Assembly (NCBI GenBank): GCA_950097015.1
Contig: CATNEN010000012.1
Coordinates: 3,658,001-3,722,000 of the forward strand
Length of the DNA: 64,000 nt
Reading direction: 5' to 3'
From: Macrostomum hystrix
Lineage: Eukaryota > Animalia > Platyhelminthes
Shown: positions 3,609-58,224 of the stretch, piece after piece
Layout of the letters: every line of letters begins with the position of its first letter
Position numbering within the stretch: position 1 is the first letter of the stretch
Made by a program: the position numbers and the translations under genes
Notes under the pieces: model-generated
The model's database searches: none
What the model saw: only the letters and a program-made list of their open reading frames with translations
What the model was told of the DNA's origin: nothing

Positions 3609-4360
<752 letters not shown>

Positions 4361-18741: not shown

Positions 18742-21700
18742 TTACCTGGCAGAATTCGTCGACCGTTTAAACAATGTCGGCAGCCGCAGACTCGGACCAC
18801 CGTGCTTTTGACCAGCAGTTCCAACTCCACTGGCTTCCAAAAGTTGCTGATGCTCCTGAAGGGGATCAGCTGGTGGCAGGCGGTACAGGTGGTGACTGCG
18901 ATGCCGGTGATGCGGAAGCCGATGACGCCGGCTGGTCTCGCCGGTGTGGTCTCGACGACCCGACTGTGACTCATCTGTGGCCGCCTCCGGCTGCTGCTGT
19001 GTGGCGTCCAGCTTTGAAAAGGGGAGTCGATTTTAAGTCGGTTAGTATTTGTCTTTTAACAATAAGCATTGAATGCAATTTGTTCGTATTGCGAAAATGC
19101 TGTGTAAAACTGTGCATATTACTTGTAGTAGACAAATAAATTCGTAACTTAGTAAACTTTAACTGAGAAGTATAGGTTCTTTACTACTAGTGCCAAAAAG
19201 AATTTTTTATGAAGGTTTTTAAAGGCGAGTCACGCAGAATTTCTCTAAAAAATGCGAAAATATGTTTTTTAAAATCAATCAGGATTCGAGCCGGTGTCAC
19301 CGCCACGCGACGACTGGCTACTGTCTTGGCCTCTAGGCTATTTCATAGATCAAGATAAACGTTAAGTTAAGGTCGATTTAAACCGCCATCCTACGACACA
19401 AAAAACACGAGATTTTTTTTACATTGTTTTTGACAATATACAGCAGAACAGACTCCTTTGAATATTAAAACACAACAACTGAAATTCCGCTAAAATTTCC
19501 GCTGAGGCTGAAATCTAAGGTTGAGTATAGCATAATTCCCCACACCTGCAATGTTAGGCCCATTTTTAGTCCCAGTTGTTATTATTAAAAAGCATGGCGC
19601 AATAATGAAATTGCGTTCCATTCCACCGCTCTACATCCAAGGTTAGAAGGGAAACTAAATAAACCATTACGTTTGTGTAGGACAGATCTATCAACGAATA
19701 ATCTGCATGTCAGTGTTACGTCTAGAAAAATTAAAAATAGAAAAATATTAAGTCTAAAAATGCACCAATAAATAATAATTAATACTTTTAAAATATTAAA
19801 TATCAAATAACGTGTCAAAGAACAATGGATAACAGAAGGAACAACATCTAATGGCTTTCCTGCCAGTGCCTACTTTAAGTAGAGTAAGGTATAATTAGTC
19901 CAATCAATACGTATCTTTTTACTAAAAAAGTACTTTCTAAGAGAAGAGCTGCAAAGAAACTAAAGAAACAGTGCGTATTATATTTTAAATAGTTAGTTTA
20001 CAAGAAAGGATAACCAAACTAGAACTTTTCAACATAAGGCCCCACATCACAAACAAAAACAACATTCCACTACGATAACTAGGTATCTCAAAAACGCAAT
20101 ACATTCATTTCGATAGATTGCAATGTGAATCTACGTATTCAGTAACTCTGGTTTCTCTTCATTCCACGCTTAAATCTTTCGCCTTTTACTAAAGATTTCC
20201 GTGGAGAGGTACATTCATTGAGTGTTCCTTGATTTGTGCAACCCCATTCCTAGAAGGGGGTACTTTTAAAGTACACCAGTAAGCTCCCTATAGTGCTCCT
20301 TGTTCATTCTCACCTGTTTTAGTTTTATTTTTGCAGTCTCTCTCTCCCCCTGTACTTGTAGTTTTAGTTTTATTCTAGCAGTCCCCCACCCCCTCCCTTG
20401 AGTGCGCACTTTGTGTGCCACCTGCCCCCTTTGCTTATTTTGTTTACCTTGCACCAGTGAGAAATCACGCCATATGGCTGCGAATCGCGCCACAACTTCA
20501 AAAAAACACGACGGCCGCCCCTCGCTCGAGCATCGGTACGGCCGCACCGAAGACGCCAGTCGCAAGCTGCAGCCGAAGGTCGCGACAGCGCTGATGTCGA
20601 CTCCGATGCCGGCCAGCGAGACCTCTGAACCGGCAACCAGCACCCAAGACCGCGGCTCGCTCAGCCCACCAGAAGGTCGGCTAGTGATAGTCGAGGACGA
20701 GTCTCAAGCAGTGACTGCGGCCCCCGAGACTGCGGACTCAAACGAGACGGCCGACAGAATGTCCGTCGATGAAGCCGAGGCAGCCGAGACGGCTGCTCAA
20801 CAGACTGAGGCTGCGGCAGCACCTGCGACAGCGCCAACAGCATCCGAGTCGGCTGCGAGTGCCCAGACGACAATTCCGAAGCCCACCGCTGCACAGTCAG
20901 ACGCCGACATCTCGCAGATCGTCTTCCCTGACGAGCCGGACTTCAGCGAGTGCCAGCAGACGACCTACGCGGGCGACTGCACCATCGTCTACGCGCCCTA
21001 CTTTCTTGGCGAGGTCGCTGACCAAATATACCAGCGCCTGATGGCAGACGTGCTCCCACTCGCCTTCCGTCATCGCCCGCACGAGCAGCGCCGTGTCTTC
21101 TGGATCGGCCCGGCGTACACCTACAGCGGGGTTGAGCTGAAGGAGAATCAAACCTGGCATCCAGTAATCGAAGACATTCGTGACTTCCTTTACGACGATG
21201 CTGGGCTCGAGGTCCCGAAGTTCAACTCCGTTCTGGTGAACTTCTACACCGAGCCGGAGGACCGGATTCCGTGGCATGCGGATGACGAGGAGGAGCTCGG
21301 CGACAAGCCGACCATCGCTACAGTGTCGTTCGGCGCTGAGCGAACTTTTATGTTGCGTCGACGTGACGGAAACGTCACGCATCGATTTCAGACGCTCCCG
21401 GGATCGCTGATCCTCATGGGAGGCAATTGTCAAAAGCGGCTGCAGCATCAGGTGCCTGCAGTTCGCACCCAGACCGGCGTCCGCATCTCACTGACGTTCC
21501 GCGTCACCAAGCCGGAGCTGCGGCGCAAGAGGGCGGCGACCGACGACCCAACCTACAGCCAGCCACTGGACTGCGGTCCCTTCGGCGACCGGCAAGGCAA
21601 CCCAGGCCAGCCCCAGGACCAGCAGGCAGAGCGCGGCGGCGGCGGTCAGCGCGGCGCACGTGGTCAGCGCGGCGGCGGCGGTCAGCAGCGAGGCAGCCGC

Positions 21701-24700
21701 GGTGGCGGCGGCGGCAGACAGCGAGGCACGCGAGGTGGCGGCGGCGGCCGAGGTGCGGCGGCTGGTGCGGCGGCAGCGTCGGCGACCGCGGTGACGGGTT
21801 CGTCGGCGGCGTCGGCGGCGGCGGCAGCGGCGGCTGCTTCAACGACCCAGGCTGCGACAGCGCGGCCCTATGCGCAGGTGGCTTCGGCCCGCGCTCCATT
21901 GCGAAGACCCCAGGCTGCCATTCCACCGGTGGTCTTTGAAGTGCACCGAAACGCGGCGGGCAAGCTGGTGGCCTTCATCACCTGGCTGCAGGCCAACTTT
22001 GCCGGCGATGCCCGTGCCGTCAACACAGCCGAAATGGCCAATCAGCCCGCCTACCTAGTATTCCCGGCCACTGAGCGGGATTACAACGTCTTCCTAGGCG
22101 GTGCTCTGCGTCAGGACAGCCTCCTCGGACACCGTGTCGAGCGTCGACCAGCACGATCACGGCCGCTGGACAACCGGACTGGCGCTGACAGAGTACGGCA
22201 GCAGCCACTGCTCACCTTTGTGGCGCTCGACGTGCCGTTTTCCTTCACGGAAGCCGAATTCGCCAGCATGCTCCGCGAGTCCCTGAAGCTCGACATCACG
22301 AGTGTGCATCGGATCCGTGCGCGAGCATCCGGGCAGGCCACCCGGTACATGCGCATCTTTACGAAGTCGAGAGCGACATTCGACCAGTGCCTTCGCGAAG
22401 GCATCTGCACTGACTTTCTGAAGTTCAGCTGCGAAGAGAGCCGCACCGACGAGCCGGTCCGCGCCCTGCAGTGCCAGCGCTGCCAGCAGTTCGGCCACCG
22501 TGCAGCTCAGTGCCAGGTGGAGCTGCGATGCCGAATCTGCGGCGGCTCGCATGCCTGGAAGGACTGCCAGCACGAAGGCCCGGCGACATGCTCCAACTGC
22601 GGTGGTCAGCACCGCACGACCAGCCGAGCCTGCACTGTTGCGCAGGAGGAGCACGCCAAGGCGACGAAGGCGGCAGCTGAGGCCAAAGCTGCTGCGGCGC
22701 GAGCTGCGGAAGCCGCGGCTACGGATGCTCCGCCTGCCTCGAGTGCGCCCGCCGACGTGTCCGACGCTTCGGACAGTGGCTGGCTGATGCGCCAAGGCCG
22801 CCGCAACGTGCCCGTCAATGCCGCCATCCGGCCGCTGTTCATCAGCAACGATGATGCCAGGAGCCGACCGGCTGCCGAGACTGTCAGCGCCAGGTGCACG
22901 AGCGCCAATGAGGCTGCACCCTCCCTGGACGCTGGCAGTGAGCCACAGCAGCAGCAGCAGACTGACTTGAAGCAGATGGTGAGCATGCTGTTGCCCCTGA
23001 TCACCCGCTCTCTGACCCAGGTGATTGTGCGGGCCCTGTCCAGGCCGCCTGGTGAGCTCCTCACAGTGGAATCGACCAGTAAAATGGTTGAGGACATTGT
23101 GCGGGCTGTCCTCCAGGACGTGTCTGGCATGGCCTCCACCGCCACCGTGGTCGTGGGCCCAGGCAGCTAAACCAGAAAACTGTAAATTCCTCAATTTAAA
23201 TGGGAACCCTATTACCCAGACAACGGGTCTGAAAATTATGCACCTCAACTGCAGAGGGTTTCACCCGAAAAGCAGAGAACTCACCCAATGGGTCATTAGT
23301 CAAGAGATAGACATTGCTCTCTTCTCTGAAACCATTCTCAAGAGTTCGCACACGGTCCAGATCCCTGGCTACTCCATCATCCGGTACGACACTCCGCAAG
23401 TCAGACGCGGCCTGCTCCTTGCTCACTCACCGCGCGTGAAACTCACAAATGTTCGCTTGCACTACGACAATGTGAACCATGAAGCCATCTCCTGCACCGT
23501 CAGCCTGTCTGACAACTCCCACGGTGCCGACTTTAATCTGGCTCTGGTGTACAGGTCTCCGGCACCTTACCACCTGAACCTGAACCTGCTCAAGAGCCTG
23601 GTCTCGCGCAGACGCAGTGTTCTCCTTGGCGACCTCAATGCCAGACACCGCTTCCTTGGCGGTGACAGCAGCAACAACAGGGCTGGCCATGAGCTGTACG
23701 ACTGGCTCTCTGAAGGTCTGGCCTCGCCCACCATCCTCAATCAAGTTGGCCAGTTCACCAGAATCGCCACCAAAAATGGCGTCACTTCCAGGAATGTCTT
23801 GGACCTCGGCCTGGCCACGGAGGACTTTCTGCCCTTTGTGCAGGACTTTGCAGTCGGTCCCGACCTGGACAGCGACCACCTGCCAATCATCCTCACCCTC
23901 AACATTCAGTCGGCAAAGTGGGCAGGTCCCGCTAAGCCGAAAAACTTTTCCAAAACCGACTGGGATCAGTTCAGGCTGAAGATCAGTGAAGCCCTTCTTC
24001 CTGACCAGCCGACTCGCCTATCGAGTGCTCAGCAAATCGACGCCGAGGTCGAGCTCATCACAAAGGCCATCCACACGGTCATTGAGTCGACTGTGCCAGA
24101 CTGTGGTGGCCGAAATGCTCTGCCCAAGCACATCCTTGAGCTGATTAGAGAGCGCCGACGACTCAGACGCCTCTTCAACAGCACCCGGGATGAAAACTTT
24201 AAAAGGCTGGCCAACCAAATGGCCAACAGGATCAAAAGGGAAATTACGTCCTTCCAGAGCGGCAAGCTCACCAAGCTGTGTGAGAATGTTGTCGAGAACA
24301 GCAAGAACAGCAAGGTCAAGAACTTCTGGCATGACACCAGGAAGCTGATGGGCAAGTTCAAGCCCAGCTCCATCCCAACCCTCACTTCGGGTCAAACCAG
24401 TGCGCACACTGATCTGGAGAAAGCGAACCTTCTCGCTGCCACTCTGGACTCAAAGATGCGCCCAGTCCCATCCACTTGCGAGCAGCTCAAACAGGAGGTG
24501 GCCGAAGTGGCCAAGTTCATCGCTTTCTATCCGATTCCGGCCGACATCAATGGCATAGCCACTCACCCGCTTGAAGCCGCATTCACTGTAGCCGACACAG
24601 TGTGGGAGCTTGAGCACCTCAAGCCTGATGGAGCACCCGGGCTGGATAAGATTCCCAATCGAGTGCTCAAACTCGGCCTTGAAGGCGTGGCGATCACCAG

Positions 24701-27700
24701 GATCACCAAACTCTTTAACGCCTGCTTCAGTCAAGGGATCTTCCCCAGCGCTTGGAAGAAAGCTGTGGTGACAATGATCCCGAAGCCTGACAAACCGCCA
24801 GACAATCCAAACTCGTACAGGCCAATCAGCCTGACCTCTTGCTTAGGCAAGGTGTTTGAGAAGCTGATTGCCAAGAGACTCTCCAAATACCTTGAGGACA
24901 AGAACATTCTTGGCGATGACCAATGCGCTTATCGCAAAGTCCACTCCACCTACGACAACCTGTGCCGACTGGTGCAGGACATGATGGTCGCAAAGTGCAA
25001 AGCAAAGAGGGCCGCTGCAGTCTTCCTTGATGTAGAGGCGGCCTTTGACTCTGCCTGGCACGACATGCTCAGGAGCCGCATGCTCAACGCTGGCTTTCCT
25101 TCAATGCTGACGCGCATCCTGTCTGACTACCTCAGGAACAGGTACATCCAGGTGCGAGTCAACAACTCGCTCAGTGAGCTGATCAGAATCCTAGCTGGCG
25201 TACCTCAGGGAGGCATCTTGAGTCCTCTCCTGTACCTGCTGTACGTCAGCACAATGCCGATTCCTGAGAATCCAAACGTGAAACGCAGTCAATTTGCTGA
25301 CGACATGGCCATCTGGGCCTCCGCAGACACCTTTGCTGGTCTGCGGACATGCCTCCAGAGCTACCTCAGACAAGTCTGGGAGTGGTGCGGAAAGCAAGGC
25401 ATCAGACTGAATGCCGACAAGAGCAAGGCCATCGCCTTCAACTACAAGCCGACAGCTCGCGCCGACTTGCGACCCAAACTGCAGCTGGGGCAGACGGTGG
25501 TCCCCTACTGTCAGGAAGTAAAATTTCTAGGTGTCCTCCTCGACGCCAATCTTTGCCTGAATAAACACGTCGACAACATGGCGAACACGTGCAGGGCCAT
25601 TGTCATGTCCCTGTGCCGCATCGCCAAGATCACCAAACTGAGCAGCGTCACTCTCAGAATGCTGTACAGGGCCTACGGTGAGAGCGCTCTCACCTACGGC
25701 GCCCCAATCTTGACTCTGATCTGCGTCACCAATCAGATCAAGCTACAAAAGATCCAGAACCTTGCTCTGCGAATCTGCTACGGTGTGCCTTCCTACCTGA
25801 GCACCGAGTACCTTCACAAAATGGCCGGCATGCCAATGCTCTCGGCCAGAGTCAAACAGCTCGGTGTGGCCTGGCTGCTCAAGATGAGAGCAGCTCGACT
25901 GCACGGCTTCCACATCGAGCCGGAGCTGCCTCGCGCTCCGGGCCGAGTCCCCATCCTCAATGTCCTGTGGGCTACCCTGAGGCGGGGACAAATCAACAGG
26001 CAGAACCGACTCCAAATCCAGGGTTGAGCAGTCTCTGACAACTATGGCCCTGAAAGAAAAACCAAAATGAAACTCAAATAGCTGCCTGAGCTCAAGAGGG
26101 CTGGTGAGCAGTGCTCAGCTGCTATGATATTATATTCTTTACGTTTTTCAAACTGATTAACGTGATTTTATTGCCTAAAAAGTACTTTTTGCTTTTGTTA
26201 TGTTGCTATTTGCTCATAAACTGCTAGCTCTTTACACACCAGAGTTTTTAATTCCCAAATAAATCCTTTCTTTTTACTTTTGCCTATTTTTATACGTAAT
26301 ATGTACCGCATTGCCTAGAAATGTTTTTAATTCGCATTTCATGGTTTAATTTACTATTTTTATTTTCTATTTTTGCTAACAAATATTCTAATTGCTTTTA
26401 ATTGCGCTCACAAATATCTTGCATGCATGCCTTTTAGATTTCCCTTTTTTATTAGATCCCTTCTTTGTGCGGGATTCCCTTTGTATATTTCTCCCCTTTT
26501 ATCTTCCAATGCGTGCCCAAATATTGCCAAATATTGAATTATTGTTTTATTGTTTTATTTTTATTTTCAATATTCGTATAATCCAGATCGAAACGCTTGT
26601 ATATTTTAAATAAATTTCGATTAAATATATTAAAAAATATAGCGGCAGAGTTCCTCGGAACTGACCCGCTCCCCAGTACTTCGGGGAATTCGTTTTAACA
26701 ACAAAGATTTCCGTGGAGAGGTACATTCATTGAGTGTTCCTTGATTTGTGCAACCCCATTCCTAGAAGGGGGTACTTTTAAAGTACACCAGTAAGCTCCC
26801 TATAGTGCTCCTTGTTCATTCTCACCTGTTTTAGTTTTATTTTTGCAGTCTCTCTCTCCCCCTGTACTTGTAGTTTTAGTTTTATTCTAGCAGTCCCCCA
26901 CCCCCTCCCTTGAGTGCGCACTTTGTGTGCCACCTGCCCCCTTTGCTTATTTTGTTTACCTTGCACCAGTGAGAAATCACGCCATATGGCTGCGAATCGC
27001 GCCACAACTTCAAAAAAACACGACGGCCGCCCCTCGCTCGAGCATCGGTACGGCCGCACCGAAGACGCCAGTCGCAAGCTGCAGCCGAAGGTCGCGACAG
27101 CGCTGATGTCGACTCCGATGCCGGCCAGCGAGACCTCTGAACCGGCAACCAGCACCCAAGACCGCGGCTCGCTCAGCCCACCAGAAGGTCGGCTAGTGAT
27201 AGTCGAGGACGAGTCTCAAGCAGTGACTGCGGCCCCCGAGACTGCGGACTCAAACGAGACGGCCGACAGAATGTCCGTCGATGAAGCCGAGGCAGCCGAG
27301 ACGGCTGCTCAACAGACTGAGGCTGCGGCAGCACCTGCGACAGCGCCAACAGCATCCGAGTCGGCTGCGAGTGCCCAGACGACAATTCCGAAGCCCACCG
27401 CTGCACAGTCAGACGCCGACATCTCGCAGATCGTCTTCCCTGACGAGCCGGACTTCAGCGAGTGCCAGCAGACGACCTACGCGGGCGACTGCACCATCGT
27501 CTACGCGCCCTACTTTCTTGGCGAGGTCGCTGACCAAATATACCAGCGCCTGATGGCAGACGTGCTCCCACTCGCCTTCCGTCATCGCCCGCACGAGCAG
27601 CGCCGTGTCTTCTGGATCGGCCCGGCGTACACCTACAGCGGGGTTGAGCTGAAGGAGAATCAAACCTGGCATCCAGTAATCGAAGACATTCGTGACTTCC

Positions 27701-30700
27701 TTTACGACGATGCTGGGCTCGAGGTCCCGAAGTTCAACTCCGTTCTGGTGAACTTCTACACCGAGCCGGAGGACCGGATTCCGTGGCATGCGGATGACGA
27801 GGAGGAGCTCGGCGACAAGCCGACCATCGCTACAGTGTCGTTCGGCGCTGAGCGAACTTTTATGTTGCGTCGACGTGACGGAAACGTCACGCATCGATTT
27901 CAGACGCTCCCGGGATCGCTGATCCTCATGGGAGGCAATTGTCAAAAGCGGCTGCAGCATCAGGTGCCTGCAGTTCGCACCCAGACCGGCGTCCGCATCT
28001 CACTGACGTTCCGCGTCACCAAGCCGGAGCTGCGGCGCAAGAGGGCGGCGACCGACGACCCAACCTACAGCCAGCCACTGGACTGCGGTCCCTTCGGCGA
28101 CCGGCAAGGCAACCCAGGCCAGCCCCAGGACCAGCAGGCAGAGCGCGGCGGCGGCGGTCAGCGCGGCGCACGTGGTCAGCGCGGCGGCGGCGGTCAGCAG
28201 CGAGGCAGCCGCGGTGGCGGCGGCGGCAGACAGCGAGGCACGCGAGGTGGCGGCGGCGGCCGAGGTGCGGCGGCTGGTGCGGCGGCAGCGTCGGCGACCG
28301 CGGTGACGGGTTCGTCGGCGGCGTCGGCGGCGGCGGCAGCGGCGGCTGCTTCAACGACCCAGGCTGCGACAGCGCGGCCCTATGCGCAGGTGGCTTCGGC
28401 CCGCGCTCCATTGCGAAGACCCCAGGCTGCCATTCCACCGGTGGTCTTTGAAGTGCACCGAAACGCGGCGGGCAAGCTGGTGGCCTTCATCACCTGGCTG
28501 CAGGCCAACTTTGCCGGCGATGCCCGTGCCGTCAACACAGCCGAAATGGCCAATCAGCCCGCCTACCTAGTATTCCCGGCCACTGAGCGGGATTACAACG
28601 TCTTCCTAGGCGGTGCTCTGCGTCAGGACAGCCTCCTCGGACACCGTGTCGAGCGTCGACCAGCACGATCACGGCCGCTGGACAACCGGACTGGCGCTGA
28701 CAGAGTACGGCAGCAGCCACTGCTCACCTTTGTGGCGCTCGACGTGCCGTTTTCCTTCACGGAAGCCGAATTCGCCAGCATGCTCCGCGAGTCCCTGAAG
28801 CTCGACATCACGAGTGTGCATCGGATCCGTGCGCGAGCATCCGGGCAGGCCACCCGGTACATGCGCATCTTTACGAAGTCGAGAGCGACATTCGACCAGT
28901 GCCTTCGCGAAGGCATCTGCACTGACTTTCTGAAGTTCAGCTGCGAAGAGAGCCGCACCGACGAGCCGGTCCGCGCCCTGCAGTGCCAGCGCTGCCAGCA
29001 GTTCGGCCACCGTGCAGCTCAGTGCCAGGTGGAGCTGCGATGCCGAATCTGCGGCGGCTCGCATGCCTGGAAGGACTGCCAGCACGAAGGCCCGGCGACA
29101 TGCTCCAACTGCGGTGGTCAGCACCGCACGACCAGCCGAGCCTGCACTGTTGCGCAGGAGGAGCACGCCAAGGCGACGAAGGCGGCAGCTGAGGCCAAAG
29201 CTGCTGCGGCGCGAGCTGCGGAAGCCGCGGCTACGGATGCTCCGCCTGCCTCGAGTGCGCCCGCCGACGTGTCCGACGCTTCGGACAGTGGCTGGCTGAT
29301 GCGCCAAGGCCGCCGCAACGTGCCCGTCAATGCCGCCATCCGGCCGCTGTTCATCAGCAACGATGATGCCAGGAGCCGACCGGCTGCCGAGACTGTCAGC
29401 GCCAGGTGCACGAGCGCCAATGAGGCTGCACCCTCCCTGGACGCTGGCAGTGAGCCACAGCAGCAGCAGCAGCAGACTGACTTGAAGCAGATGGTGAGCA
29501 TGCTGTTGCCCCTGATCACCCGCTCTCTGACCCAGGTGATTGTGCGGGCCCTGTCCAGGCCGCCTGGTGAGCTCCTCACAGTGGAATCGACCAGTAAAAT
29601 GGTTGAGGACATTGTGCGGGCTGTCCTCCAGGACGTGTCTGGCATGGCCTCCACCGCCACCGTGGTCGTGGGCCCAGGCAGCTAAACCAGAAAACTGTAA
29701 ATTCCTCAATTTAAATGGGAACCCTATTACCCAGACAACGGGTCTGAAAATTATGCACCTCAACTGCAGAGGGTTTCACCCGAAAAGCAGAGAACTCACC
29801 CAATGGGTCATTAGTCAAGAGATAGACATTGCTCTCTTCTCTGAAACCATTCTCAAGAGTTCGCACACGGTCCAGATCCCTGGCTACTCCATCATCCGGT
29901 ACGACACTCCGCAAGTCAGACGCGGCCTGCTCCTTGCTCACTCACCGCGCGTGAAACTCACAAATGTTCGCTTGCACTACGACAATGTGAACCATGAAGC
30001 CATCTCCTGCACCGTCAGCCTGTCTGACAACTCCCACGGTGCCGACTTTAATCTGGCTCTGGTGTACAGGTCTCCGGCACCTTACCACCTGAACCTGAAC
30101 CTGCTCAAGAGCCTGGTCTCGCGCAGACGCAGTGTTCTCCTTGGCGACCTCAATGCCAGACACCGCTTCCTTGGCGGTGACAGCAGCAACAACAGGGCTG
30201 GCCATGAGCTGTACGACTGGCTCTCTGAAGGTCTGGCCTCGCCCACCATCCTCAATCAAGTTGGCCAGTTCACCAGAATCGCCACCAAAAATGGCGTCAC
30301 TTCCAGGAATGTCTTGGACCTCGGCCTGGCCACGGAGGACTTTCTGCCCTTTGTGCAGGACTTTGCAGTCGGTCCCGACCTGGACAGCGACCACCTGCCA
30401 ATCATCCTCACCCTCAACATTCAGTCGGCAAAGTGGGCAGGTCCCGCTAAGCCGAAAAACTTTTCCAAAACCGACTGGGATCAGTTCAGGCTGAAGATCA
30501 GTGAAGCCCTTCTTCCTGACCAGCCGACTCGCCTATCGAGTGCTCAGCAAATCGACGCCGAGGTCGAGCTCATCACAAAGGCCATCCACACGGTCATTGA
30601 GTCGACTGTGCCAGACTGTGGTGGCCGAAATGCTCTGCCCAAGCACATCCTTGAGCTGATTAGAGAGCGCCGACGACTCAGACGCCTCTTCAACAGCACC

Positions 30701-33700: not shown

Positions 33701-36700
33701 CAGAAGGTCGGCTTGTCATCGTCGAAGACGAGCCTCCAGCAGTGACTGCGGCCCCCGCGACTGCGGACTCAAACGAGACGGCCGACAGAATGTCCGTCGA
33801 TGAAGCCGAGGCAGCCGAGACGGCTGCTCAACAGACTGAGGCTGCGGCAGCACCTGCGCCAGCGCCAACAGCATCCGAGTCGGCTGCTATTGCCCAGACG
33901 ACAATTCCGAAGCCCACCGCTGCACAGTCAGACGCCGACATCTCGCAGATCGTCTTCCCTGACGAGCCGGACTTCAGCGAGTGCCAGCAGACGACCTACG
34001 CGGGCGACTGCACCATCGTCTACGCGCCCTACTTTCTTGGCGAGGTCGCTGACCAAATATACCAGCGCCTGATGGCAGACGTGCTCCCACTCGCCTTCCG
34101 TCATCGCCCGCACGAGCAGCGCCGTGTCTTCTGGATCGGCCCGGCGTACACCTACAGCGGGGTTGAGCTGAAGGAAAATCAAACCTGGCATCCAGTAATC
34201 GAAGACATTCGTGACTTCCTTTACGACGATGCTGGGCTCGAGGTCCCGAAGTTCAACTCCGTTCTGGTGAACTTCTACACCGAGCCGGAGGACCGGATTC
34301 CGTGGCATGCGGATGACGAGGAGGAGCTCGGCGACAAGCCGACCATCGCTACAGTGTCGTTCGGCGCTGAGCGAACTTTTATGTTGCGTCGACGTGACGG
34401 AAACGTCACGCATCGATTTCAGACGCTCCCGGGATCGCTGATCCTCATGGGAGGCAATTGTCAAAAGCGGCTGCAGCATCAGGTGCCTGCAGTTCGCACC
34501 CAGACCGGCGTCCGCATCTCACTGACGTTCCGCGTCACCAAGCCGGAGCTGCGGCGCAAGAGGGCGGCGACCGACGACCCAACCTACAGCCAGCCACTGG
34601 ACTGCGGTCCCTTCGGCGACCGGCAAGGCAACCCAGGCCAGCCCCAGGACCAGCAGGCAGAGCGCGGCGGCGGCGGTCAGCGCGGCGCACGTGGTCAGCG
34701 CGGCGGCGGCGGTCAGCAGCGAGGCAGCCGCGGTGGCGGCGGCGGCAGACAGCGAGGCACGCGAGGTGGCGGCGGCGGCCGAGGTGCGGCGGCTGGTGCG
34801 GCGGCAGCGTCGGCGACCGCGGTGACGGGTTCGTCGGCGGCGTCGGCGGCGGCGGCAGCGGCGGCTGCTTCAACGACCCAGGCTGCGACAGCGCGGCCCT
34901 ATGCGCAGGTGGCTTCGGCCCGCGCTCCATTGCGAAGACCCCAGGCTGCCATTCCACCGGTGGTCTTTGAAGTGCACCGAAACGCGGCGGGCAAGCTGGT
35001 GGCCTTCATCACCTGGCTGCAGGCCAACTTTGCCGGCGATGCCCGTGCCGTCAACACAGCCGAGATGGCCAATCAGCCCGCCTACCTAGTATTCCCGGCC
35101 ACTGAGCGGGATTACAACGTCTTCCTAGGCGGTGCTCTGCGTCAGGACAGCCTCCTCGGACACCGTGTCGAGCGTCGACCAGCACGATCACGGCCGCTGG
35201 ACAACCGGACTGGCGCTGACAGAGTACGGCAGCAGCCACTGCTCACCTTTGTGGCGCTCGACGTGCCGTTTTCCTTCACGGAAGCCGAATTCGCCAGCAT
35301 GCTCCGCGAGTCCCTGAAGCTCGACATCACGAGTGTGCATCGGATCCGTGCGCGAGCATCCGGGCAGGCCACCCGGTACATGCGCATCTTTACGAAGTCG
35401 AGAGCCACATTCGACCAGTGCCTTCGCGAAGGCATCTGCACTGACTTTCTGAAGTTCAGCTGCGAAGAGAGCCGCACCGACGAGCCGGTCCGCGCCCTGC
35501 AGTGCCAGCGCTGCCAGCAGTTCGGCCACCGTGCAGCTCAGTGCCAGGTGGAGCTGCGATGCCGAATCTGCGGCGGCTCGCATGCCTGGAAGGACTGCCA
35601 GCACGAAGGCCCGGCGACATGCTCCAACTGCGGTGGTCAGCACCGCACGACCAGCCGAGCCTGCACTGTTGCGCAGAAGGAGCACGCCAAGGCGACGAAG
35701 GCGGCAGCTGAGGCCAAAGCTGCTGCGGCGCGAGCTGCGGAAGCCGCGGCTACGGATGCTCCGCCTGCCTCGAGTGCGCCCGCCGACGTGTCCGACGCTT
35801 CGGACAGTGGCTGGCTGATGCGCCAAGGCCGCCGCAACGTGCCCGTCAATGCCGCCATCCGGCCGCTGTTCATCAGCAACGATGATGCCAGGAGCCGACC
35901 GGCTGCCGAGACTGTCAGCGCCAGGTGCACGAGCGCCAATGAGGCTGCACCCTCCCTGGATGCTGGCAGTGAGCCACAGCAGCAACAGCAGCAGCAGACT
36001 GACTTGAAGCAGATGGTGAGCATGCTGTTGCCCCTGATCACCCGCTCTCTGACCCAGGTGATTGTGCGGGCCCTGTCCAGACCGCCTGGTGAGCTCCTCA
36101 CAGTGGAATCGACCAGTAAAATGGTTGAGGACATTGTGCGGGCTGTCCTCCAGGACGTGTCTGGCATGGCCTCCACCGCCACCGTGGTCGTGGGCCCAGG
36201 CAGCTAAACCAGAAAACTGTAAATTCCTCAATTTAAATGGGAACCCTATTACCCAGACAACGGGTCTGAAAATTATGCACCTCAACTGCAGAGGGTTTCA
36301 CCCGAAAAGCAGAGAACTCACCCAATGGGTCATTAGTCAAGAGATAGACATTGCTCTCTTCTCTGAAACCATTCTCAAGAGTTCGCACACGGTCCAGATC
36401 CCTGGCTACTCCATCATCCGGTACGACACTCCGCATGTCAGACGCGGCTTGCTCCTTGCTCACTCACCGCGCGTGAAACTCACAAATGTTCGCTTGCACT
36501 ACGACAATGTGAACCATGAAGCCATCTCCTGCACCGTCAGCCTGTCTGACAACTCTCACGGTGCCGACTTTAATCTGGCTCTGGTGTACAGGTCTCCGGC
36601 ACCTTACCACCTGAACCTGAACCTGCTCAAGAGCCTGGTCTCGCGCAGACGCAGTGTTCTCCTTGGCGACCTCAATGCCAGACACCGCTTCCTTGGCGGT

Positions 36701-39700
36701 GACAGCAGCAACAACAGGGCTGGCCATGAGCTGTACGACTGGCTCTCTGAAGGTCTGGCCTCGCCCACCATCCTCAATCAAGTTGGCCAGTTCACCAGAA
36801 TCGCCACCAAGAATGGCGTCACTTCCAGGAATGTCTTGGACCTCGGCCTGGCCACGGAGGACTTTCTGCCCTTTGTGCAGGACTTTGCAGTCGGTCCCGA
36901 CCTGGACAGCGACCACCTGCCAATCATCCTCACCCTCAACATTCAGTCGGCAAAGTGGGCAGGTCCCGCTAAGCCGAAAAACTTTTCCAAAACCGACTGG
37001 GATCAGTTCAGGCTGAAGATCAGTGAAGCCCTTCTTCCTGACCAGCCGACTCGCCTATCGAGTGCTCAGCAAATCGACGCCGAGGTCGAGCTCATCACAA
37101 AGGCCATCCACACGGTCATTGAGTCGACTGTGCCAGACTGTGGTGGCCGAAATGCTCTGCCCAAGCACATCCTTGAGCTGATCAAAGAGCGCCGACGACT
37201 TAGACGCCTCTTCAACAGCACCTGGGATGAAAACTTTAAAAGGCTGGCCAACCAAATGGCCAACAGGATCAAAAGGGAAATCACTTCCTTCCAGAGCGGC
37301 AAGCTCACCAAGCTGTGTGAGAATGTTGTCGAGAACAGCAAGAACAGCAAGGTCAAGAACTTCTGGCATGACACCAGGAAGCTGATGGGCAAGTTCAAGC
37401 CCAGCTCCATTCCAACCCTCACTTCGGGTCAAACCAGTGCGCACACTGATCTGGAGAAAGCGAACCTTCTCGCTGCCACTCTGGACTCAAAGATGCGCCC
37501 AGTCCCATCCACTTGCGACCAGCTCAAACAGGAGGTGGCCGAAGTGGCCAAGTTCATCGCCTTCTATCCGATTCCGGCCGACATCAATGGCATAGCCACT
37601 CACCCGCTTGAAGCCGCATTCACTGTAGCCGACACAGTGTGGGAGCTTGAGCACCTCAAGCCTGATGGAGCACCTGGGCTGGACAAGATTCCCAATCGAG
37701 TGCTCAAACTCGGCCTTGAAGGCGTGGCGATCACCAGGATCACCAGACTCTTTAACGCCTGCTTCAGTCAAGGGATCTTCCCCAGCGCTTGGAAGAAAGC
37801 TGTGGTGACAATGATCCCGAAGCCTGACAAACCGCCAGACAATCCAAACTCGTACAGGCCAATCAGCCTGACCTCTTGCTTAGGCAAGGTGTTTGAGAAG
37901 CTGATTGCCAAGAGACTCTCCAAATTCCTTGAAGACAAGAACATTCTTGGCGATGACCAATGCGCTTATCGCAAAGTCCACTCCACCTACGACAACCTGT
38001 GCCGATTGGTGCAGGACATGATGGTCGCAAAGTGCAAAGCAAAGAGGGCCGCTGCAGTCTTCCTTGATGTAGAGGCTGCCTTTGACTCTGCCTGGCACGA
38101 CATGCTTAGGAGCCGCATGCTCAACGCTGGCCTTCCTTCGATGCTGATGCGCATCCTGTCTGACTACCTCAGGAACAGGTACATCCAGGTGCGAGTCAAC
38201 AACTCGCTCAGTGAGCTGATCAGAATCCTAGCTGGCGTACCTCAGGGAGGCATCTTGAGTCCTCTCCTGTACCTGCTGTACGTCAGCACAATGCCGATTC
38301 CTGAGAATCCAAACGTGAAACGCAGTCAATTTGCTGACGACATGGCCATCTGGGCCTCCGCAGACACCTTTGCTGGTCTGCGGACTTGCCTCCAGAGCTA
38401 CCTCAGACAAGTCTGGAAGTGGTGCGGAAAGCAAGGCATCAGACTGAATGCCGACAAGAGCAAGGCCATCGCCTTCAACTACAAGCCGACAGCTCGCGCC
38501 GACTTGCGACCCAAACTGCAGCTGGGACAGACGGAGGTCCCCTACTGTCAGGAAGTGAAATTTCTAGGTGTCCTCCTCGACGCCAATCTTTGCCTGAATA
38601 AACACGTCGACAACATGGCGAATACGTGCAGGGCCATTGTCATGTCCCTGTGCCGCATCGCCAAGATCACCAAACTGAGCAGCGTCACTCTCAGAATGCT
38701 GTACAGGGCCTACGGTGAGAGTGCTCTCACCTACGGCGCCCCAATCTTGACTCTGATCTGCGTAACCAATCAGATCAAGCTACAAAAGATCCAGAACCTT
38801 GCTCTGCGAATCTGCTACGGTGTGCCTTCCTACCTGAGCACCGAGTACCTTCACAAACTGGCCGGCATGCCAATGCTCTCGGCCAGAGTCAAACAGCTCG
38901 GTGTGGCCTGGCTGCTCAAGATGAGAGCAGCTCGGCTGCACGGCTTCCACATCGAGCCGGAGCTGCCTCGCGCTCCGGGCCGAGTTCCCATCCTCAATGT
39001 CCTGTGGGCTGCCCTGAGGCGGGGACAAATCAACAGGCAGAACCCACTCCCAATCCAGGGCTGAGCAGTCTCTGAGACCCATGGCCCTGAAAGTAAACTA
39101 AAATGAAATTTAAATAGCTGCCTGAGCTCAAGAGAGCTGGTGAGCTGTGCTCAGCTGCTCTGTCATTCCATTCATTACGCTCTTTGCCTACTGACTTAAT
39201 GTCTTTTATTGCCTATGAGTACTAATGGCTGTATTGTCACTTTTGCTCTTTATTCACGAACTGCTCGCTTTTTATATACCAGAGTTTTTAATTCCCAAAT
39301 AAATGCATTGTTTTTACTTCTGCTTATTTTTTCTACTTTAAATGTGCAGCATTGCCTAGAAATGTTTTTAAATTCGCATTTCATGTTTTCATTTACTACT
39401 TTTATCTTCTATATTTCTTTAACAAATATTCTAATTGCTTTCAATTGCGCTCACAAATATCTTGCATGCATGCCTTTTAGATTTCCCTTTTTTATTAGAT
39501 CCTTTCTTTGTGCGGGATTCCCCCGTATATTTCTCTCCAGTATTCCAAATTCGTGCCCAAATATAGCGAAATATTGAGCAGTTTTATTTTCTTACTTATG
39601 ACTTCTTTTTTAATATTCGCCTTATTAATCTAGATCAAATGGCGTGTAAATATGTTATTAAATTTGATTAAAAATATTTAACAACTGCGGCTGAGTTCGT

Positions 39701-42700
39701 CAGAACTGAACCGCGCCCCAGTCTTTTGGGGGATTTGTATTAACAACAAAGATTTCGGTGGAAATCCTGGGAAATTTCTGTTAAAGGAAATACCTCACAA
39801 TCTTATTTTTGGGGAATAAATTGGCCAACTAACTGAGAGCGATTGCAGCCGATATGTATCGAAAAATCTATTGCGCTCACCTTTACCAAGTGCTTAGCAA
39901 TCATTCGCCACCTGGGTAGCAGCAGGTGTCGCTGCAGAGTGAAAGCCAGAATGACCAATGGGAAGGCCAGGGCAGCGTAGGCCAGCTGCAGGAACTGCGC
40001 CAGGCAGTTCAGTGTCAGCAGCAGAAGCACGTGCAGCATCTGCAGGGTGGTGAAGGCTAGCAGGACGGCGCTGGGCACGTCCAGGTAGGACTTTGGCTGG
40101 CGATTCTTCTTTAACCGAAGCAGGTTAAATAGGCGATCAGTTAGCTGCAGATCAGACAGGGCTGATAGGCCCATGTAGAGAAACATACCTGGGCAGGTAG
40201 AGAATCGAGGATTGTAAATGTATTTGCTTTGCTATAAAAACAATGATTAGCTACTTCGTAATTAGTATTTGATTACACCTGCCCAAACTGAGCCACATGA
40301 GTTGCCGACAGATGTTCAGTCCATGGACTAGAGGGTCGCCACAGCCACCCTGAATTACCCCAGCTAATGCTGGCACCCATTTGCGAGTAACAGCTGGGTA
40401 AACTGAAGCAATGCAGAGTTAGGTGTCCCAATGAGATCAGGATTCGAATCCCCGACCTTAAAGTCGTGTATCCGACGCTCTAACCACTTTACTACAACCC
40501 TTCGCTCAACCAATGTTATAGATAAAACAAGCAATATTTAAATCAAGCTCGCTACTATGAGTAGGCAGTCCAGCTCACCGTCCATAGCGGCTAGGGGAAT
40601 GAGGCGCAGCAGGCTGGCAGCCAATACGGACGCGGCCAGCAGGGCTCCCACAGCCAGGCCGCTAGCCCGCTGCTCGGCCACGCCCAGGACCCGTCGCGGA
40701 CAGCCGGGAATGGGATTGGCCGGGTCCGACAGGGTCAGCACCCGGACGTGCGTGTGCGAGCGGACGGTGGCGGCGGTGACCAGCGGCCAGCCGAGCAGGC
40801 CATGCAGAGGCGGAGCCAGAGCGGCGATCAGCGCCAGGTTGAGGTGATGGCCGGTGGGTTTGGCCAGCCGCTTGCCTAGCCCGATGCCGCATAGGCCAGT
40901 CTCTGTGAATAACACAACTGCGGTGCAGGCCCCGATGAGCAGGGCGATGAGGTGCCCGGAGGCTCCGATGGCGGCCAGCTCGGCGGTGCTGGGAAGGCGA
41001 GGCGACAGGCCGGACAGAAGCTGGCCGAGATCGCCGCTGAGCTGGTTGAGGTGAGACGGCGTTCTTAGAAACCGCAGTTCAATAGAAGGCGAGATGGAAA
41101 TTGGGTGGAAAAAAGACAGGATGAGATTCAGATAAGACAGGATGAGATTCAGATAAGACAGGATGAGATTCAGATAACACAGGATGAGATTCAGATAACA
41201 CAGGATGAGATTCAGATAACACAGGATGAGATTCAGATAACACAGGATGAGATTCAGATAAGACAGGATGAGATTCAGATAAGACAGGATGAGATTCAGA
41301 TAACACAGGATGAGATTCAGATAACACAGGATGAGATTCAGATAACACAGGATGAGATTCAGATAACACAGGATGAGATTCAGATAACACAGGATGAGAT
41401 TCAGATAAGACAGGATGAGATTCAGATAAGACAGGATGAGATTCAGATAACACAGGATGAGATTCAGATAACACAGGATGAGATTCAGATAAGACAGGAT
41501 GAGATTCAAATAACACAGGATGAGATTCAGATAACACAGGATGAGATTCAGATAACGCAGGATGAGATTCAAATAACACAGGATGAGATTAAAATAACAC
41601 AGGATGAGATTCAGGTAGTTCAGGGTGAGATTCAGATAACACAGGATGAGATTCAGGTAGTTCAGGGTGAGATTCAGATAACACAGGATGAGATTCAGAT
41701 AACGCAGGATGAGATTCAGATAACGCAGAATGAGATTCAGATAAGACAGGATGAGATTCAGATAAGACAGGATGAGATTCAGATAACACAGGATGAGATT
41801 CAGATAACACAGGATGAGATTCAGATAAGACAGGATGAGATTCAGATAACACAGGATGAGATTCAGATAAGACAGGATGAGATTCAGATAAGACAGGATG
41901 AGATTCAAATAACACAGGATGAGATTCAGATAACACAGGATGAGATTCAGATAACGCAGGATGAGATTCAAATAACACAGGATGAGATTAAAATAACACA
42001 GGATGAGATTCAGATAAGACAGGATGAGATTCAAATAACACAGGATGAGATTCAGATAACACAGGATGAGATTCAGGTAGTTCAGGGTGAGATTCAGATA
42101 ACACAGGATGAGATTCAGGTAGTTCAGGGTGAGATTCAGATAACACAGGATGAGATTCAGATAACGCAGGATGAGATTCAGATAACGCAGGATGAGATTC
42201 AGATAACACAGAATGAGATTCAGATAAGACAGGATGAGATTCAGATAACACAGGATGAGATTCAAATAACACAGGATGAGATTCAGGTAGTTCAGGGTGA
42301 GATTCAGATAACACAGGATGAGATTCAGATAACGCAGGATGAGATTCAGATAACACAGAATGAGATTCAGATAATACAGGATGAGATTCAGATAAGACAG
42401 GATGAGATTTAGGTAGTTCAGGGTGAGATTCAGGTAGGTCAGGTTGAGGATTCAGATAGGACTTAGGTAGACCTTACCTGTAACGCGGCGAGGCTGTGAT
42501 GCCGCATGGCGGTGTTCGCCAGCAGGGTGATGACAGCAATGGCCAATGGCACGTTTAGTCCGGCGATAAGGTCCCGGGTTCGACGGCCCAGATAGTTGCC
42601 CCGCTTGAACTGCAGGATCCTCAGCGCCAGCAGCGCTGTCGCCAGCGTCAGGAAGGCGGCGCCGGCCGCGTCTCCGGCCAGCTGGGTGAACATTCGCACA

Positions 42701-49050: not shown

Positions 49051-49769
49051 GAAGTTTTTAAGCTGTAAATATATCGTATTTAGACTTTTCTAAAATGCCG
49101 CTTATCTCAGTAGCCTTTCACACGTTAGTGAGAGAAAATATTAAAAATATCGCTAAATATCGAGAACTTACTTGACAAATTGTAATTCTGAATTTTCAAC
49201 ATCCCGATAGTTCGAGACAAGGGGATTTGAAAGCTAAGATAGAGAATGATATTGAGTTGATGCTCACCCGATGCTCTGCTATCCTTGGCTCTGCTCTCGG
49301 TCCCAGCGGTGTTCGAACAGCTCTGTAATAGAGAATAAGTTTTCAAACCCGAGCTAGAAGCCTAGAGCCCGGTTGGTGAATTTTCACTGTGGCCAGAATG
49401 GGTACAGAATAGACAAATTTGTCGCATGGCCATACTGCAGTGCGGCTACAAACTTGTAGGACAGGTCGGACATTTCTAGGCGCGATAGTTAAGAACGAAA
49501 AATAACAAACCAATGTGCTAGTTAAAGTTTGTCTATGCATTCTTGGAATATCGAACAATGATGCCCTTTATTTACATGGAAAGTTCCACTATGCCTAAAG
49601 TACATAGTGCTTAGTTTGTGATTCTCAATATGCCAAACTCAAGGCCAAATTAAAAATATATAAAAGTAACAAAACAGAACTTCCATACAACGCACTGAAA
49701 TATCACCAGCATTTTTTCGTGATCCGCAATTAGTTCCATTCCATTTCTGTATACTATATAGTCCATAAC

Positions 49770-50195
49770 AGACACCTCCCTCCAATTCCAGTCCACTCCA
49801 GACACCTCCCTCCCTTTCCAGTCCATGTCAGACTCCTCCCTCCCCTTTAAGTCCATTCCAGACACCTCCTTCCCCTTCCAGTCCATGCCAGACACCTCCC
49901 TCCCCTTACAGTCCATGCCAGACACCTCCCTCCCCTTACAGTCCATGCCAGACACCTCCGTCCACTTCCAGTCCATGTCAGACTCCTCCCTCCCCTTTAA
50001 GTCCATTCCAGACACCTCCTTCCCCTTACAGTCCATGATAGACACCTCCCTCCACTTCCAGTCCATGCCAGACACCTCCCTCCACTTCCAGTCCATGCCA
50101 GACACCTCCCTCCACTTCCAGTCCATGCCAGACACCTCCCTCCACTTCCAGTCCATGCCAGACACCTCCCTCCACTTCCAGTCCATTCCAGACAC
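49770..50195. repeat. Minisatellite, 30 bp unit
   Basis: CAGTCCATGCCAGACACCTCCCTCCACTTC. Confidence 0.93.
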
Positions 50196-53100: not shown

Positions 53101-53409
53101 GGCTGTGCTGTATTTTGTGCTATAATTGAGCGCCGTAAAAATCCTAGCAGCAGCTCCGCTCGCCACGCTGCCCCTCCTGACCATGTACTTTTCATACGTA
53201 TGTTTCATTCTGTGATAGACATGCCATATGTATTAAGCGGCAGTCACTTGTTAAATAAAAAGTATTGAACATGCTCATGTTAATTTTCTATTCGTCACCG
53301 CTATAAATGGTTTACGAATACGTCCATTCTAGTCTCATTAAATTCTTTTGACGCAGCTAAAGGTACAAATTTATTATTAAGTTCAGAGCGAAAATTAGTC
53401 CACATTTTG

Positions 53410-58090: not shown

Positions 58091-58224
58091 GGTGACGGGC
58101 CTGAGAGCCTTTCGGCCGGATGGGGCGAAGTTTTAGAAGCACCTTCAATGAGCTTTCTGCTCTTAAAGAGGCCTGTGTCACGACTAACTGAAGGAGAGGG
58201 CAATCATCAACTGTGATGAGTGGT

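What the first reader, a model, noticed from the sequence alone, without database searches (positions are those of the whole stretch)
20143..39762. U5 snRNA-targeting LINE that carries the 3' part of U5 and rebuilds its own target gene
Seen: all three AAC tails (ending 26702, 33215, 39747) are joined to AAAGATTTC(C/G)GTGGA, the U5 sequence right after loop 1. All three copies begin with the same 71-nt U5 3' segment (stem partner, Sm-like site, terminal hairpin). The leftmost copy fuses seamlessly to a U5 5' half and gives a full-length U5 (20143-20261). Known: sequence-specific non-LTR elements target rDNA (R1, R2), spliced-leader genes (NeSL, CRE/SLACS) and U2 snRNA (Keno, Utopia), and normally disrupt the copy they enter. 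Inference: this element nicks at CCTTTTACT|AAAGA and replaces the displaced 3' part with its own, so U5 stays intact, the target is regenerated, and the element could be transcribed by read-through from the U5 promoter. I do not recall a U5-specific, target-restoring Jockey/I-like family, but I cannot search.
Basis: partly seen in the sequence, partly recalled or inferred. Interest (0 to 1): 0.95.

Follow-up and report, generated by a model that had tools for sequence, protein, structure and literature searches.

The report
LINE that rebuilds U5 snRNA genes
A flatworm jumping gene (a LINE) cuts U5 spliceosomal RNA genes at one fixed spot, brings its own replacement for the displaced half of U5, and appears to be read from the U5 promoter. 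Three of the four promoter-bearing U5 genes in this genome are rebuilt this way, and Macrostomum lignano has the same arrangement.

Summary

**What is there.** Window 20143-20261 is a full-length U5 (Rfam, 82.4 bits). It heads three tandem 6.5-kb LINE copies, each joined tail-to-U5 loop 1.

**Correction 1: the mobile RNA carries the whole U5, not only its 3' part.**
- Four full-length copies lie outside U5 genes. Three have mapped 12-17 bp target-site duplications (TSDs).
- All four start at U5 +1 to +9, so the template RNA starts at the U5 transcription start.

**Correction 2: targeting is a strong preference, not absolute.**
- 12 of 16 full-length copies sit in three U5 genes that share a promoter-like motif.
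- About 18-20 truncated copies lie at loose (A)CT|AAA or TT|AAA sites.

**Genome-wide count.** There are 8 intact U5 cores, and 7 are fused to the element.

**Proof of mechanism from Macrostomum lignano** (element about 77% identical in DNA):
- the same arrays;
- a truncated copy in U5 flanked by a 14-bp TSD;
- one array followed by the displaced host-type U5 3' half.

**Not shown.** I could get no RNA data. Whether the rebuilt genes make working U5 is unknown.

**Literature.** One Tx1 family is catalogued as U5-targeting. I found no report of a target-regenerating LINE driven by an snRNA promoter.

The parts
20068..20083 (+). Promoter-like (PSE-like) motif CACTACGATAACTAGG, about 75 nt upstream of U5 +1
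   Evidence: It sits at the same offset upstream of all three arrays, with a related motif 2 nt away in the free U5 gene. The 1.5-kb flanks are otherwise unrelated. The core TACGAAAAC lies at -74 in M. lignano. It is absent from the four off-target copies. Its promoter role is inferred, not shown.
20143..20261 (+). Complete U5 snRNA sequence; inferred +1 is the A at 20144. It is a chimera of the host 5' part and the element's 3' part.
   Evidence: Rfam RF00020, 82.4 bits, model positions 1-117. The TSD-flanked copy on C25 starts at AACTCTGG.
20143..20191 (+). U5 5' half up to loop 1. At this locus it comes from the host gene, but it is also part of the mobile RNA.
   Evidence: It is present in all off-target full-length copies.
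20192..20205 (+). The 14 nt after the nick. This is the segment duplicated on insertion (TSD), so it is host-derived in the first head.
   Evidence: A 14-bp TSD of this segment flanks a truncated copy in M. lignano L062. Off-target TSDs in this genome are 12-17 bp, mostly 14.
20192..26702 (+). LINE copy 1: U5 3' half 20192-20261, 5' UTR 20262-20473, ORF1 20474-23170, ORF2 23238-26027, 3' UTR 26028-26702
   Evidence: ORFs. Pfam finds a 2OG-FeII_Oxy_2 (AlkB-like) domain in ORF1, and APE endonuclease plus RVT_1 domains in ORF2. CCHC knuckles are visible in the ORF1 alignment.
26642..26702 (+). 3' UTR end: hairpin 26642-26669, hairpin 26671-26686, tail AATTCGTTTTAACAAC
   Evidence: RNAalifold on 10 tails from several subfamilies; the stem of the first hairpin shows compensatory changes.
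26703..33215 (+). LINE copy 2: ORF1 26986-29685, ORF2 29753-32584
   Evidence: 99.97% identical to copy 1; both ORFs open.
33216..39747 (+). LINE copy 3: ORF1 33505-36207, ORF2 36275-39064. It is a mosaic.
   Evidence: 96-100% identical to copy 1 over the first 5.6 kb and 78-91% over the last 900 nt.
39748..39762 (+). 15-nt stub of the U5 sequence 3' of the nick (1 mismatch), then unrelated DNA
   Evidence: Its length equals the TSD length. The rest of the host U5 3' half is missing.

Best explanation
This is an APE-type LINE that lives in U5 snRNA genes. ORF1 carries an AlkB-like domain and CCHC knuckles, and ORF2 carries the endonuclease and reverse transcriptase. Resident copies lie directly behind a complete U5 sequence under the host U5 promoter. 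RNA polymerase II starts at U5 +1, and transcripts that read past the U5 3' end carry the whole U5 as leader, followed by both ORFs and a structured 3' UTR. The endonuclease nicks the bottom strand at (A)CT|AAA, strongly preferring ACT|AAAG in U5 loop 1, and the top strand about 14 nt downstream. After target-primed reverse transcription, the free top-strand end (U5 5' half plus the 14 nt) can anneal to the U5 complement at the end of the cDNA. The new copy is then joined seamlessly: host promoter and 5' part, element-supplied 3' part, element body and tail, then the displaced old 3' half. The U5 coding sequence and the target site are both regenerated. Repeated hits on any head build head-to-tail arrays. 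Copies that land elsewhere keep the U5 leader but have no promoter. Shown: the anatomy, the junctions, the TSDs, the displaced host half and conservation in two species. Inferred: promoter use, the annealing step, and any function of the rebuilt U5.
For: Anatomy in the window. Genome census: 8 intact U5 cores, 7 fused to the element. There are 17 U5 3' halves, of which 16 are element heads and 1 is the free gene. All 16 heads are preceded either by the U5 5' half (7) or by a tail (9). The three arrays (C12, C1, C29) share only a 16-nt motif at a fixed offset, related to one in the free U5 gene and to TACGAAAAC at -74 in M. lignano. Off-target full-length copies have TSDs of 12 nt (C25), 17 nt (C3) and 12-14 nt (C2). 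They start at U5 +1, +8/9 and +5/6; the old C38 copy starts at about +5. Truncated off-target copies have 14-bp TSDs at (A)CT|AAA or TT|AAA. The C29 array interleaves two subfamilies, with head identity to copy 2 of 86, 98, 86, 97, 97 and 86%. That implies several independent hits. The U5 head is 110/110 identical between subfamilies whose 5' UTR is about 88% and whose ORF1 is about 91% identical. M. lignano (NIVC01 = Mlig_3_7, PMC5730564) shows an array of 4 copies with the same junction. It also shows a 577-nt truncated copy in U5 with a 14-bp TSD and a displaced host-type U5 3' half after the last tail of L063. That host-type half differs from this genome's free U5 gene at only a few positions. 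ORF2 is 82.5% identical in protein against about 77% in DNA between the species.
Against: In this genome no array is followed by a host-type U5 3' half. The window keeps only a 15-nt stub, and I could not read the ends of the C1 and C29 arrays. The promoter-like motif was not found upstream of the U1, U2 or U4 hits at one mismatch or fewer, so its role rests on U5 loci alone. About two thirds of independent 3' ends are off-target, and the nick motif is short, so the source of the U5 preference is unknown. The four off-target full-length copies have not been hit in their own U5 heads. The M. lignano element's U5 3' half differs strongly from the host type, so the rebuilt gene may not be a working U5.
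Confidence: 0.78

Rival explanations
1. There is no endonuclease targeting of U5. U5 is only a captured 5' leader. Tail|loop-1 junctions arise when reverse transcriptase stalls in the U5 hairpin loop and jumps to the 3' end of a second element RNA, so whole arrays are laid down in one event.
For: The jump would use the same AAA microhomology seen at all 3' junctions. Mosaic copies with a head of one subfamily and a tail of another exist.
Against: M. lignano L062 has a 5'-truncated copy in U5 flanked by a 14-bp TSD, the signature of endonuclease-initiated insertion. L063 keeps the displaced host 3' half. All four off-target full-length copies lack any tail|loop-1 junction, although 9 of 16 heads in the genome are junction-type; the chance of that is about 0.04. 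Arrays occur only at loci with the promoter-like motif.
Confidence: 0.1
2. One ancestral insertion next to a U5 gene was spread and expanded by segmental duplication, unequal crossing-over and gene conversion, with no continuing U5-directed integration.
For: Copies 1 and 2 differ at only 2 of 6.5 kb. Copy 3 is homogenised over 5.6 kb yet keeps an old 3' end, so conversion or unequal exchange clearly acts within arrays.
Against: The upstream 1.5 kb of the three loci is unrelated apart from the 16-nt motif. Two subfamilies are interleaved in the C29 array. M. lignano has at least two unrelated occupied loci, a fresh TSD-flanked insertion and a displaced host half.
Confidence: 0.06
3. The U5 head is added anew at each retrotransposition, by template switching to U5 snRNA or by RNA ligation, as in mammalian U6/L1 chimeras.
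For: snRNA/LINE chimeras of that kind are documented (PMC4476161, PMC6789731).
Against: The junction between the U5 3' end and the 5' UTR is the same in all 16 heads and in both subfamilies. The element's U5 3' half differs from the only free U5 gene, and in M. lignano it differs strongly from the host type. Array heads lie under promoter-like motifs.
Confidence: 0.02
4. The integration mechanism is as in the best explanation, but the rebuilt U5 genes make no working U5. The leader serves only the element, for example for the homology-guided 5' junction, Sm binding, capping or nuclear import, and the host depends on its free gene or genes.
For: One free promoter-bearing U5 gene exists. The host-type 3' half is nearly identical between the two species, whereas the M. 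lignano element's 3' half is very different. That is not how a fully constrained U5 should evolve.
Against: The part of U5 not needed for the 5' junction (nt 65-118) is also identical between subfamilies A and B. Both species' element heads keep a single-stranded Sm-like site and a terminal hairpin. Only 1 of 4 promoter-bearing U5 genes in the assembly is element-free.
Confidence: 0.4

Closest known systems
snRNA-gene-specific non-LTR retrotransposons: Keno and Utopia (U2), and a Tx1 family listed with target 'U5 snRNA' (PMC4640811; PMC4494074, Fig. 3 legend)
   Same: A LINE with a fixed 3' junction inside a spliceosomal snRNA gene. It forms occasional tandem insertions, varies in strength of specificity, and has off-target copies at look-alike sites.
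   Different: Those elements leave disrupted target genes; Utopia-flanked U2 genes, for example, lack their first 38 bp. This element carries the whole target gene as its leader and regenerates it. Its ORF1 has an AlkB-like domain and CCHC knuckles. Utopia uses a restriction-like endonuclease. Clade relations to Tx1 and Keno were not tested.
R2 and R1 of rDNA (co-transcription with the host gene; the 5' junction is helped by host sequence on the RNA)
   Same: It depends on the host gene's promoter. The RNA carries host-gene sequence at its 5' end that can guide the 5' junction. It persists for a long time in a small multigene family, and the 3' UTR is structured.
   Different: R2 and R1 inactivate the 28S copy they enter, and R2 frees itself with a ribozyme. 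Here the host gene is restored, no known ribozyme family scored in the window, and the promoter is a Pol II snRNA type. These R2/R1 facts are from my own knowledge.
SLACS, CZAR and CRE of trypanosomatid spliced-leader RNA genes
   Same: A site-specific LINE inside a small Sm-class RNA gene. From memory, not verified here, SLACS transcription starts at +1 of the interrupted SL gene.
   Different: Those elements split the SL gene and do not supply a replacement. They use a restriction-like endonuclease.
Phages and integrative elements that integrate into tRNA or tmRNA genes and carry a replacement 3' end
   Same: The functional logic is the same: the mobile element brings a copy of the displaced 3' part, so the target gene stays complete and the site is regenerated.
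   Different: They are prokaryotic and use a DNA recombinase with no RNA intermediate. They are unrelated in descent.
SINEU (SINEs with U1- or U2-derived heads, PMC4494074) and U6/L1 chimeric retrocopies (PMC4476161, PMC6789731)
   Same: An snRNA sequence sits at the 5' end of a retrotransposed unit.
   Different: SINEU elements are non-autonomous, and their heads are not shown to rebuild genes. U6/L1 chimeras are one-off dead copies with variable junctions. Here the head is heritable, has a constant junction, and belongs to an autonomous LINE.

Membership tests
APE-type non-LTR retrotransposon (LINE) | ORF2 with an apurinic-like endonuclease followed by a reverse transcriptase | tested here: met
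   Pfam Exo_endo_phos/Exo_endo_phos_2 and RVT_1 in all three copies. The RT matches L1 ORF2p and R2 structures.
APE-type non-LTR retrotransposon (LINE) | Target-site duplications and frequent 5' truncation | tested here: met
   TSDs of 12-17 bp at eight off-target sites and a 14-bp TSD in U5 in M. lignano.
Sequence-specific LINE (target: U5 snRNA gene) | The 3' junction falls at one fixed nucleotide of the target in independent insertions | tested here: met
   10 junctions in this genome with several subfamily combinations, and at least 8 in three M. lignano loci.
Sequence-specific LINE (target: U5 snRNA gene) | Most copies lie in the target | tested here: inconclusive
   12 of 16 full-length copies are in the target, but only about one third of independent 3' ends are. 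Against 17 target sites in 220 Mb this is a very large enrichment, but specificity is not strict.
Sequence-specific LINE (target: U5 snRNA gene) | The target gene copy is disrupted by the insertion (usual for R1, R2, Keno and Utopia) | tested here: not met
   A complete U5 scoring 82.4 bits is regenerated at the head of each array.
Tx1 clade (the clade with the catalogued U5-targeting family) | RT phylogeny places the element within Tx1/L1 | not testable with these tools
   No reference LINE set is available. Database relatives carry no clade names.
R2-like co-transcribed element | Transcription from the host gene's promoter | tested here: inconclusive
   Indirect only: off-target copies start at U5 +1 to +9. 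I obtained no RNA reads.
R2-like co-transcribed element | A self-cleaving ribozyme at the 5' end | tested here: not met
   Only U5 reached an Rfam gathering score in the window. The retrocopies keep the whole U5 leader.
snRNA/LINE chimeric retropseudogene | Variable junction between the snRNA 3' end and a truncated LINE, with no inheritance of the chimera | tested here: not met
   The junction is constant in all 16 heads and both subfamilies, and it is conserved in M. lignano.

The most novel reading that the evidence does not exclude
The LINE has in effect taken over the U5 gene family of macrostomid flatworms. Most U5 snRNA would then be made from element-rebuilt genes whose Sm site and 3' hairpin are element-encoded. 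The LINE's own mRNA would be the read-through product of the same Pol II snRNA promoter, possibly gaining an Sm core and a trimethylguanosine cap, which trans-splicing flatworms can translate. Host and element would be locked together, since removing the element would remove most U5 genes.
Probability: 0.3. Interest if true: 0.92.

Novelty: new variant of a known kind. Interest (0 to 1): 0.82.

Why it matters
Site-specific LINEs are usually thought to survive by sacrificing spare copies of a multicopy gene. snRNA genes were judged poor targets because there are few of them (PMC4640811). This element shows another solution. It carries the target gene, restores it on entry, and uses its promoter, as tRNA-integrating phages do in bacteria.

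It offers a natural example of scarless, RNA-mediated, promoter-trapping insertion into a defined site. That is relevant to LINE-based targeted gene delivery. It also raises a testable question: can part of an essential spliceosomal RNA be supplied by a transposon?

The system is open to experiment, because M. lignano is a transgenic laboratory model (PMC5730564).

Tried and rejected
**RNA evidence.**
- The look-up of sequencing runs gave five contig-only runs, none on record as RNA.
Later patterns lie beside them, and U5 comparisons were done only in local scripts.

**Array ends.**
- The downstream ends of the C1 and C29 arrays (about C1:13520001-13526004 and C29:3895001-3902586) were therefore not read.
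- I did not try to read them through pattern output.

**Checking the promoter-like motif on other snRNA genes.**
- None of the 24 pattern hits lies upstream of the U1, U2 or U4 hits, and the reversed control gave 26 hits.

**Other dead ends.**
- The 3'-box-like similarity after U5 (AAAGTRCA at the same offset in the element and the free gene) is not significant, p about 0.47.
- The sequence beyond the 15-nt stub has no similarity to the host U5 3' half or its flank.
- The word-based search with full ORF1 found nothing. The exhaustive search did find relatives.
- An exact look-up of ORF1 found no contig.
- A more distant AlkB-ORF1 LINE (33% identity, L059) has no U5 core upstream. The 56% relative (L057) lacks its 5' end.
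- Clade assignment failed for lack of named references.
- The SLACS promoter precedent could not be verified in the papers I opened.


Full report
**Observation**

- Rfam finds one family above threshold in the window: a complete U5 at 20143-20261 (82.4 bits, model positions 1-117).
- Three head-to-tail repeats with a 6512-6522 nt period follow it.
- The tails end at 26702, 33215 and 39747. Each is joined to the U5 sequence just 3' of loop 1.
- Each copy has two open reading frames. ORF1 (898-900 aa from its first ATG) has an AlkB-like 2OG-Fe(II) oxygenase domain, with CCHC knuckles visible in the alignment. ORF2 has an APE endonuclease and a reverse transcriptase.
- The 3' UTR ends in two hairpins, with compensatory changes among subfamilies, and then AATTCGTTTTAACAAC.

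**Genome census**

The window is C12:3658001-3722000 of a 220-Mb, 42-contig assembly.
Seven are fused to this element and one is free (C1:23711081-23711196).
- All 16 heads are preceded either by the U5 5' half (7) or by an element tail (9).
- All nine exact tail|loop-1 junctions lie in three arrays: C12 (this window), C1 near 13.53-13.54 Mb, and C29 at 3.90-3.935 Mb.

**The arrays sit in real U5 genes**

- The 1.5 kb upstream of the three arrays and of the free gene is unrelated, except for one motif, CACTACGA(A/T)AA(C/T)TAG. In all three arrays it lies at the same offset, about 75 nt before U5 +1. The free gene has a related ACTAAAATTAGG 2 nt away.
- The four element-headed U5 copies outside the arrays lack the motif.
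- I could not confirm the motif upstream of U1, U2 or U4 genes. Calling it a proximal promoter element is therefore an inference. It is strengthened by TACGAAAAC at -74 in M. lignano.

**The mobile RNA contains the whole U5**

Four full-length copies lie at non-U5 sites.
- C25 has a 12-bp TSD and begins exactly at AACTCTGG.
- C3 is 99.4% identical to copy 1. It has a 17-bp TSD and begins at about U5 +8/9.
- C2 has a 12-14 bp TSD and begins at +5/6.
- The old C38 copy begins at about +5.

Only the first head of an array contains those nucleotides. The templates were therefore transcribed from the U5 start site of a resident copy. This is the best available evidence for use of the U5 promoter, but it is indirect.

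**Target choice**

- Truncated off-target copies have 14-bp TSDs. Their pre-insertion sites read CTTACT|AAAC, GAACT|AAAC, GGACT|AAAC, CTCTT|AAAG and TTT|AAT. The full-length off-target copies add TTTT|AAAG, TTTT|AAAT and CTT|AAGG.
- The nick motif is thus short, and U5 loop 1 (TTACT|AAAG) fits it.
- I count about 18-20 independent off-target 3' ends against 10 at U5. With only 17 U5 sites in 220 Mb, that is an enrichment of roughly a thousandfold over what a six-base motif would give.
- The C29 array interleaves two subfamilies, with head identity to copy 2 of 86, 98, 86, 97, 97 and 86% counted from the promoter. Several independent hits are needed to explain that. Gene conversion also acts: copies 1 and 2 differ at 2 sites, and copy 3 is a mosaic with an old 3' end.

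**Sister-species proof**

An exhaustive search with ORF1 found fragments at 67-73% identity. They are Macrostomum lignano proteins on assembly NIVC01, which is Mlig_3_7 (PMC5730564). The element there is about 77% identical in DNA, and ORF2 is 82.5% identical in protein.
- NIVC01002892.1 has the promoter-like motif, a full U5 and four tandem copies with the same tail|loop-1 junction. It ends in a 95-nt head stub.
- NIVC01002030.1 has, in order: the U5 5' half, 14 nt, 6-8 nt of filler, a 577-nt 5'-truncated copy, its tail, the same 14 nt again, and a full copy. This is a textbook target-primed insertion with a 14-bp TSD at loop 1.
- NIVC01003829.1 has two copies. The last tail is followed by a U5 3' half of a different, host type, then by host flank. 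That host-type half differs at only a few positions from the free U5 gene of this genome, and it is unlike the M. lignano element's own 3' half.

These three loci show directly that the element enters host U5 genes at loop 1 and supplies a replacement 3' part.

**Mechanism, and what is inferred**

The bottom-strand nick, the top-strand cut 14 nt downstream, and the seamless junction together suggest the following. The freed top-strand end (U5 5' half plus 14 nt) anneals to the U5 complement at the 3' end of the cDNA and primes second-strand synthesis. This step is inferred.

The U5 leader is 110/110 identical between subfamilies whose neighbouring UTR and ORF1 are about 88% and 91% identical. 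The identity includes the Sm-site and hairpin part, which the junction does not need. Both species' heads keep a U5-like fold. This points to constraint, but it does not show that mature U5 is made from the rebuilt genes.

**Unexplained**

- In this genome no array is followed by a host-type 3' half.
- The window keeps only a 15-nt stub, which equals the TSD length, and then unrelated DNA. A break at the top-strand cleavage site during an abortive insertion, repaired with loss of the right side, would fit. This is speculation.

**Comparison with the literature**

- Known snRNA-targeting transposons include Keno and Utopia (U2) and Dada (U1, U6) (PMC4640811, PMC3706591).
- A Tx1 family is labelled as U5-targeting in a figure legend (PMC4494074).
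- I found no paper that combines Macrostomum, U5 snRNA and retrotransposons. I also found none describing a LINE that regenerates its target.
- The nearest analogues in function are R2 co-transcription, SLACS in spliced-leader genes (recalled from memory), and bacterial elements that restore the tRNA gene they enter.

**Limits**

From then on I worked beside them, and no RNA evidence was obtained.
- The organism is taken to be a Macrostomum flatworm. That rests on the element's nearest relatives and on earlier notes of this scan. I did not identify the species.
- The LINE clade is unresolved.

Noticed in passing
window 20978-21502 (and the same part of copies 2 and 3): ORF1 carries an AlkB-like 2OG-Fe(II) oxygenase domain (Pfam E 1e-22). 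The domain is kept in M. lignano, in a 56%-identical relative (L057), and in more distant LINE ORF1s at 29-38% identity (P0044-P0047). The only retrotransposon precedent my search found was in orchid Ty3/Gypsy elements (PMC9289625).
   Followed up: partly
window 33216-39747: Copy 3 is 96-100% identical to copy 1 over 5.6 kb but only 78-91% identical over the last 900 nt. Either an old 3' end was kept while the rest was homogenised, or the copy is a recombinant between subfamilies.
   Followed up: partly
window 39748-39762: Only 15 nt of U5 follow the last tail, which equals the TSD length. The rest of the host 3' half is gone, and no orphan host-type half exists anywhere in the assembly.
   Followed up: partly
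window 20320-20345; L058 9880-9900: The 5' UTR has a pyrimidine run ending in TTGCAG|TC in subfamily A and in M. lignano. It looks like a splice or trans-splice acceptor between U5 and ORF1. Subfamily B lacks the AG there, so it may mean nothing.
   Followed up: no
G000:C17:38711, C42:44182, C42:74830, C38:32264834: Near-perfect copies of the promoter-like motif lie in the rDNA-U1 contigs and at one other site. In two cases the motif is 6518 nt from a U1 gene, in repeats that are longer than usual. I did not see what follows them.
   Followed up: no
L063 12235-12300 (M. lignano): About 50 nt past the displaced host U5 half there is a decayed second unit. It looks like a short tail remnant (TTTTAACAAT) followed by a degraded U5 3' half, and may be a relic of an older insertion.
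   Followed up: no
window 26025-26027 versus 32540-32584: In copy 2 the ORF2 stop codon of copies 1 and 3 is a Cys codon, which extends ORF2 by 14 aa.
   Followed up: no
window 3465-4400, 10113-10970, 14658-15535, 40966-42500, 49700-50300, 53326-53900, 58123-59277, 61125-62500: The window is crowded with minisatellites of 8, 20, 21, 27, 30 and 34 bp units. Host exons nearby include a sortilin C-terminal domain (12656-13681, + strand) and a bicarbonate-transporter domain (42463-43104, - strand). An ORF at 45358-46137 has a weak P-element transposase HTH match.
   Followed up: no
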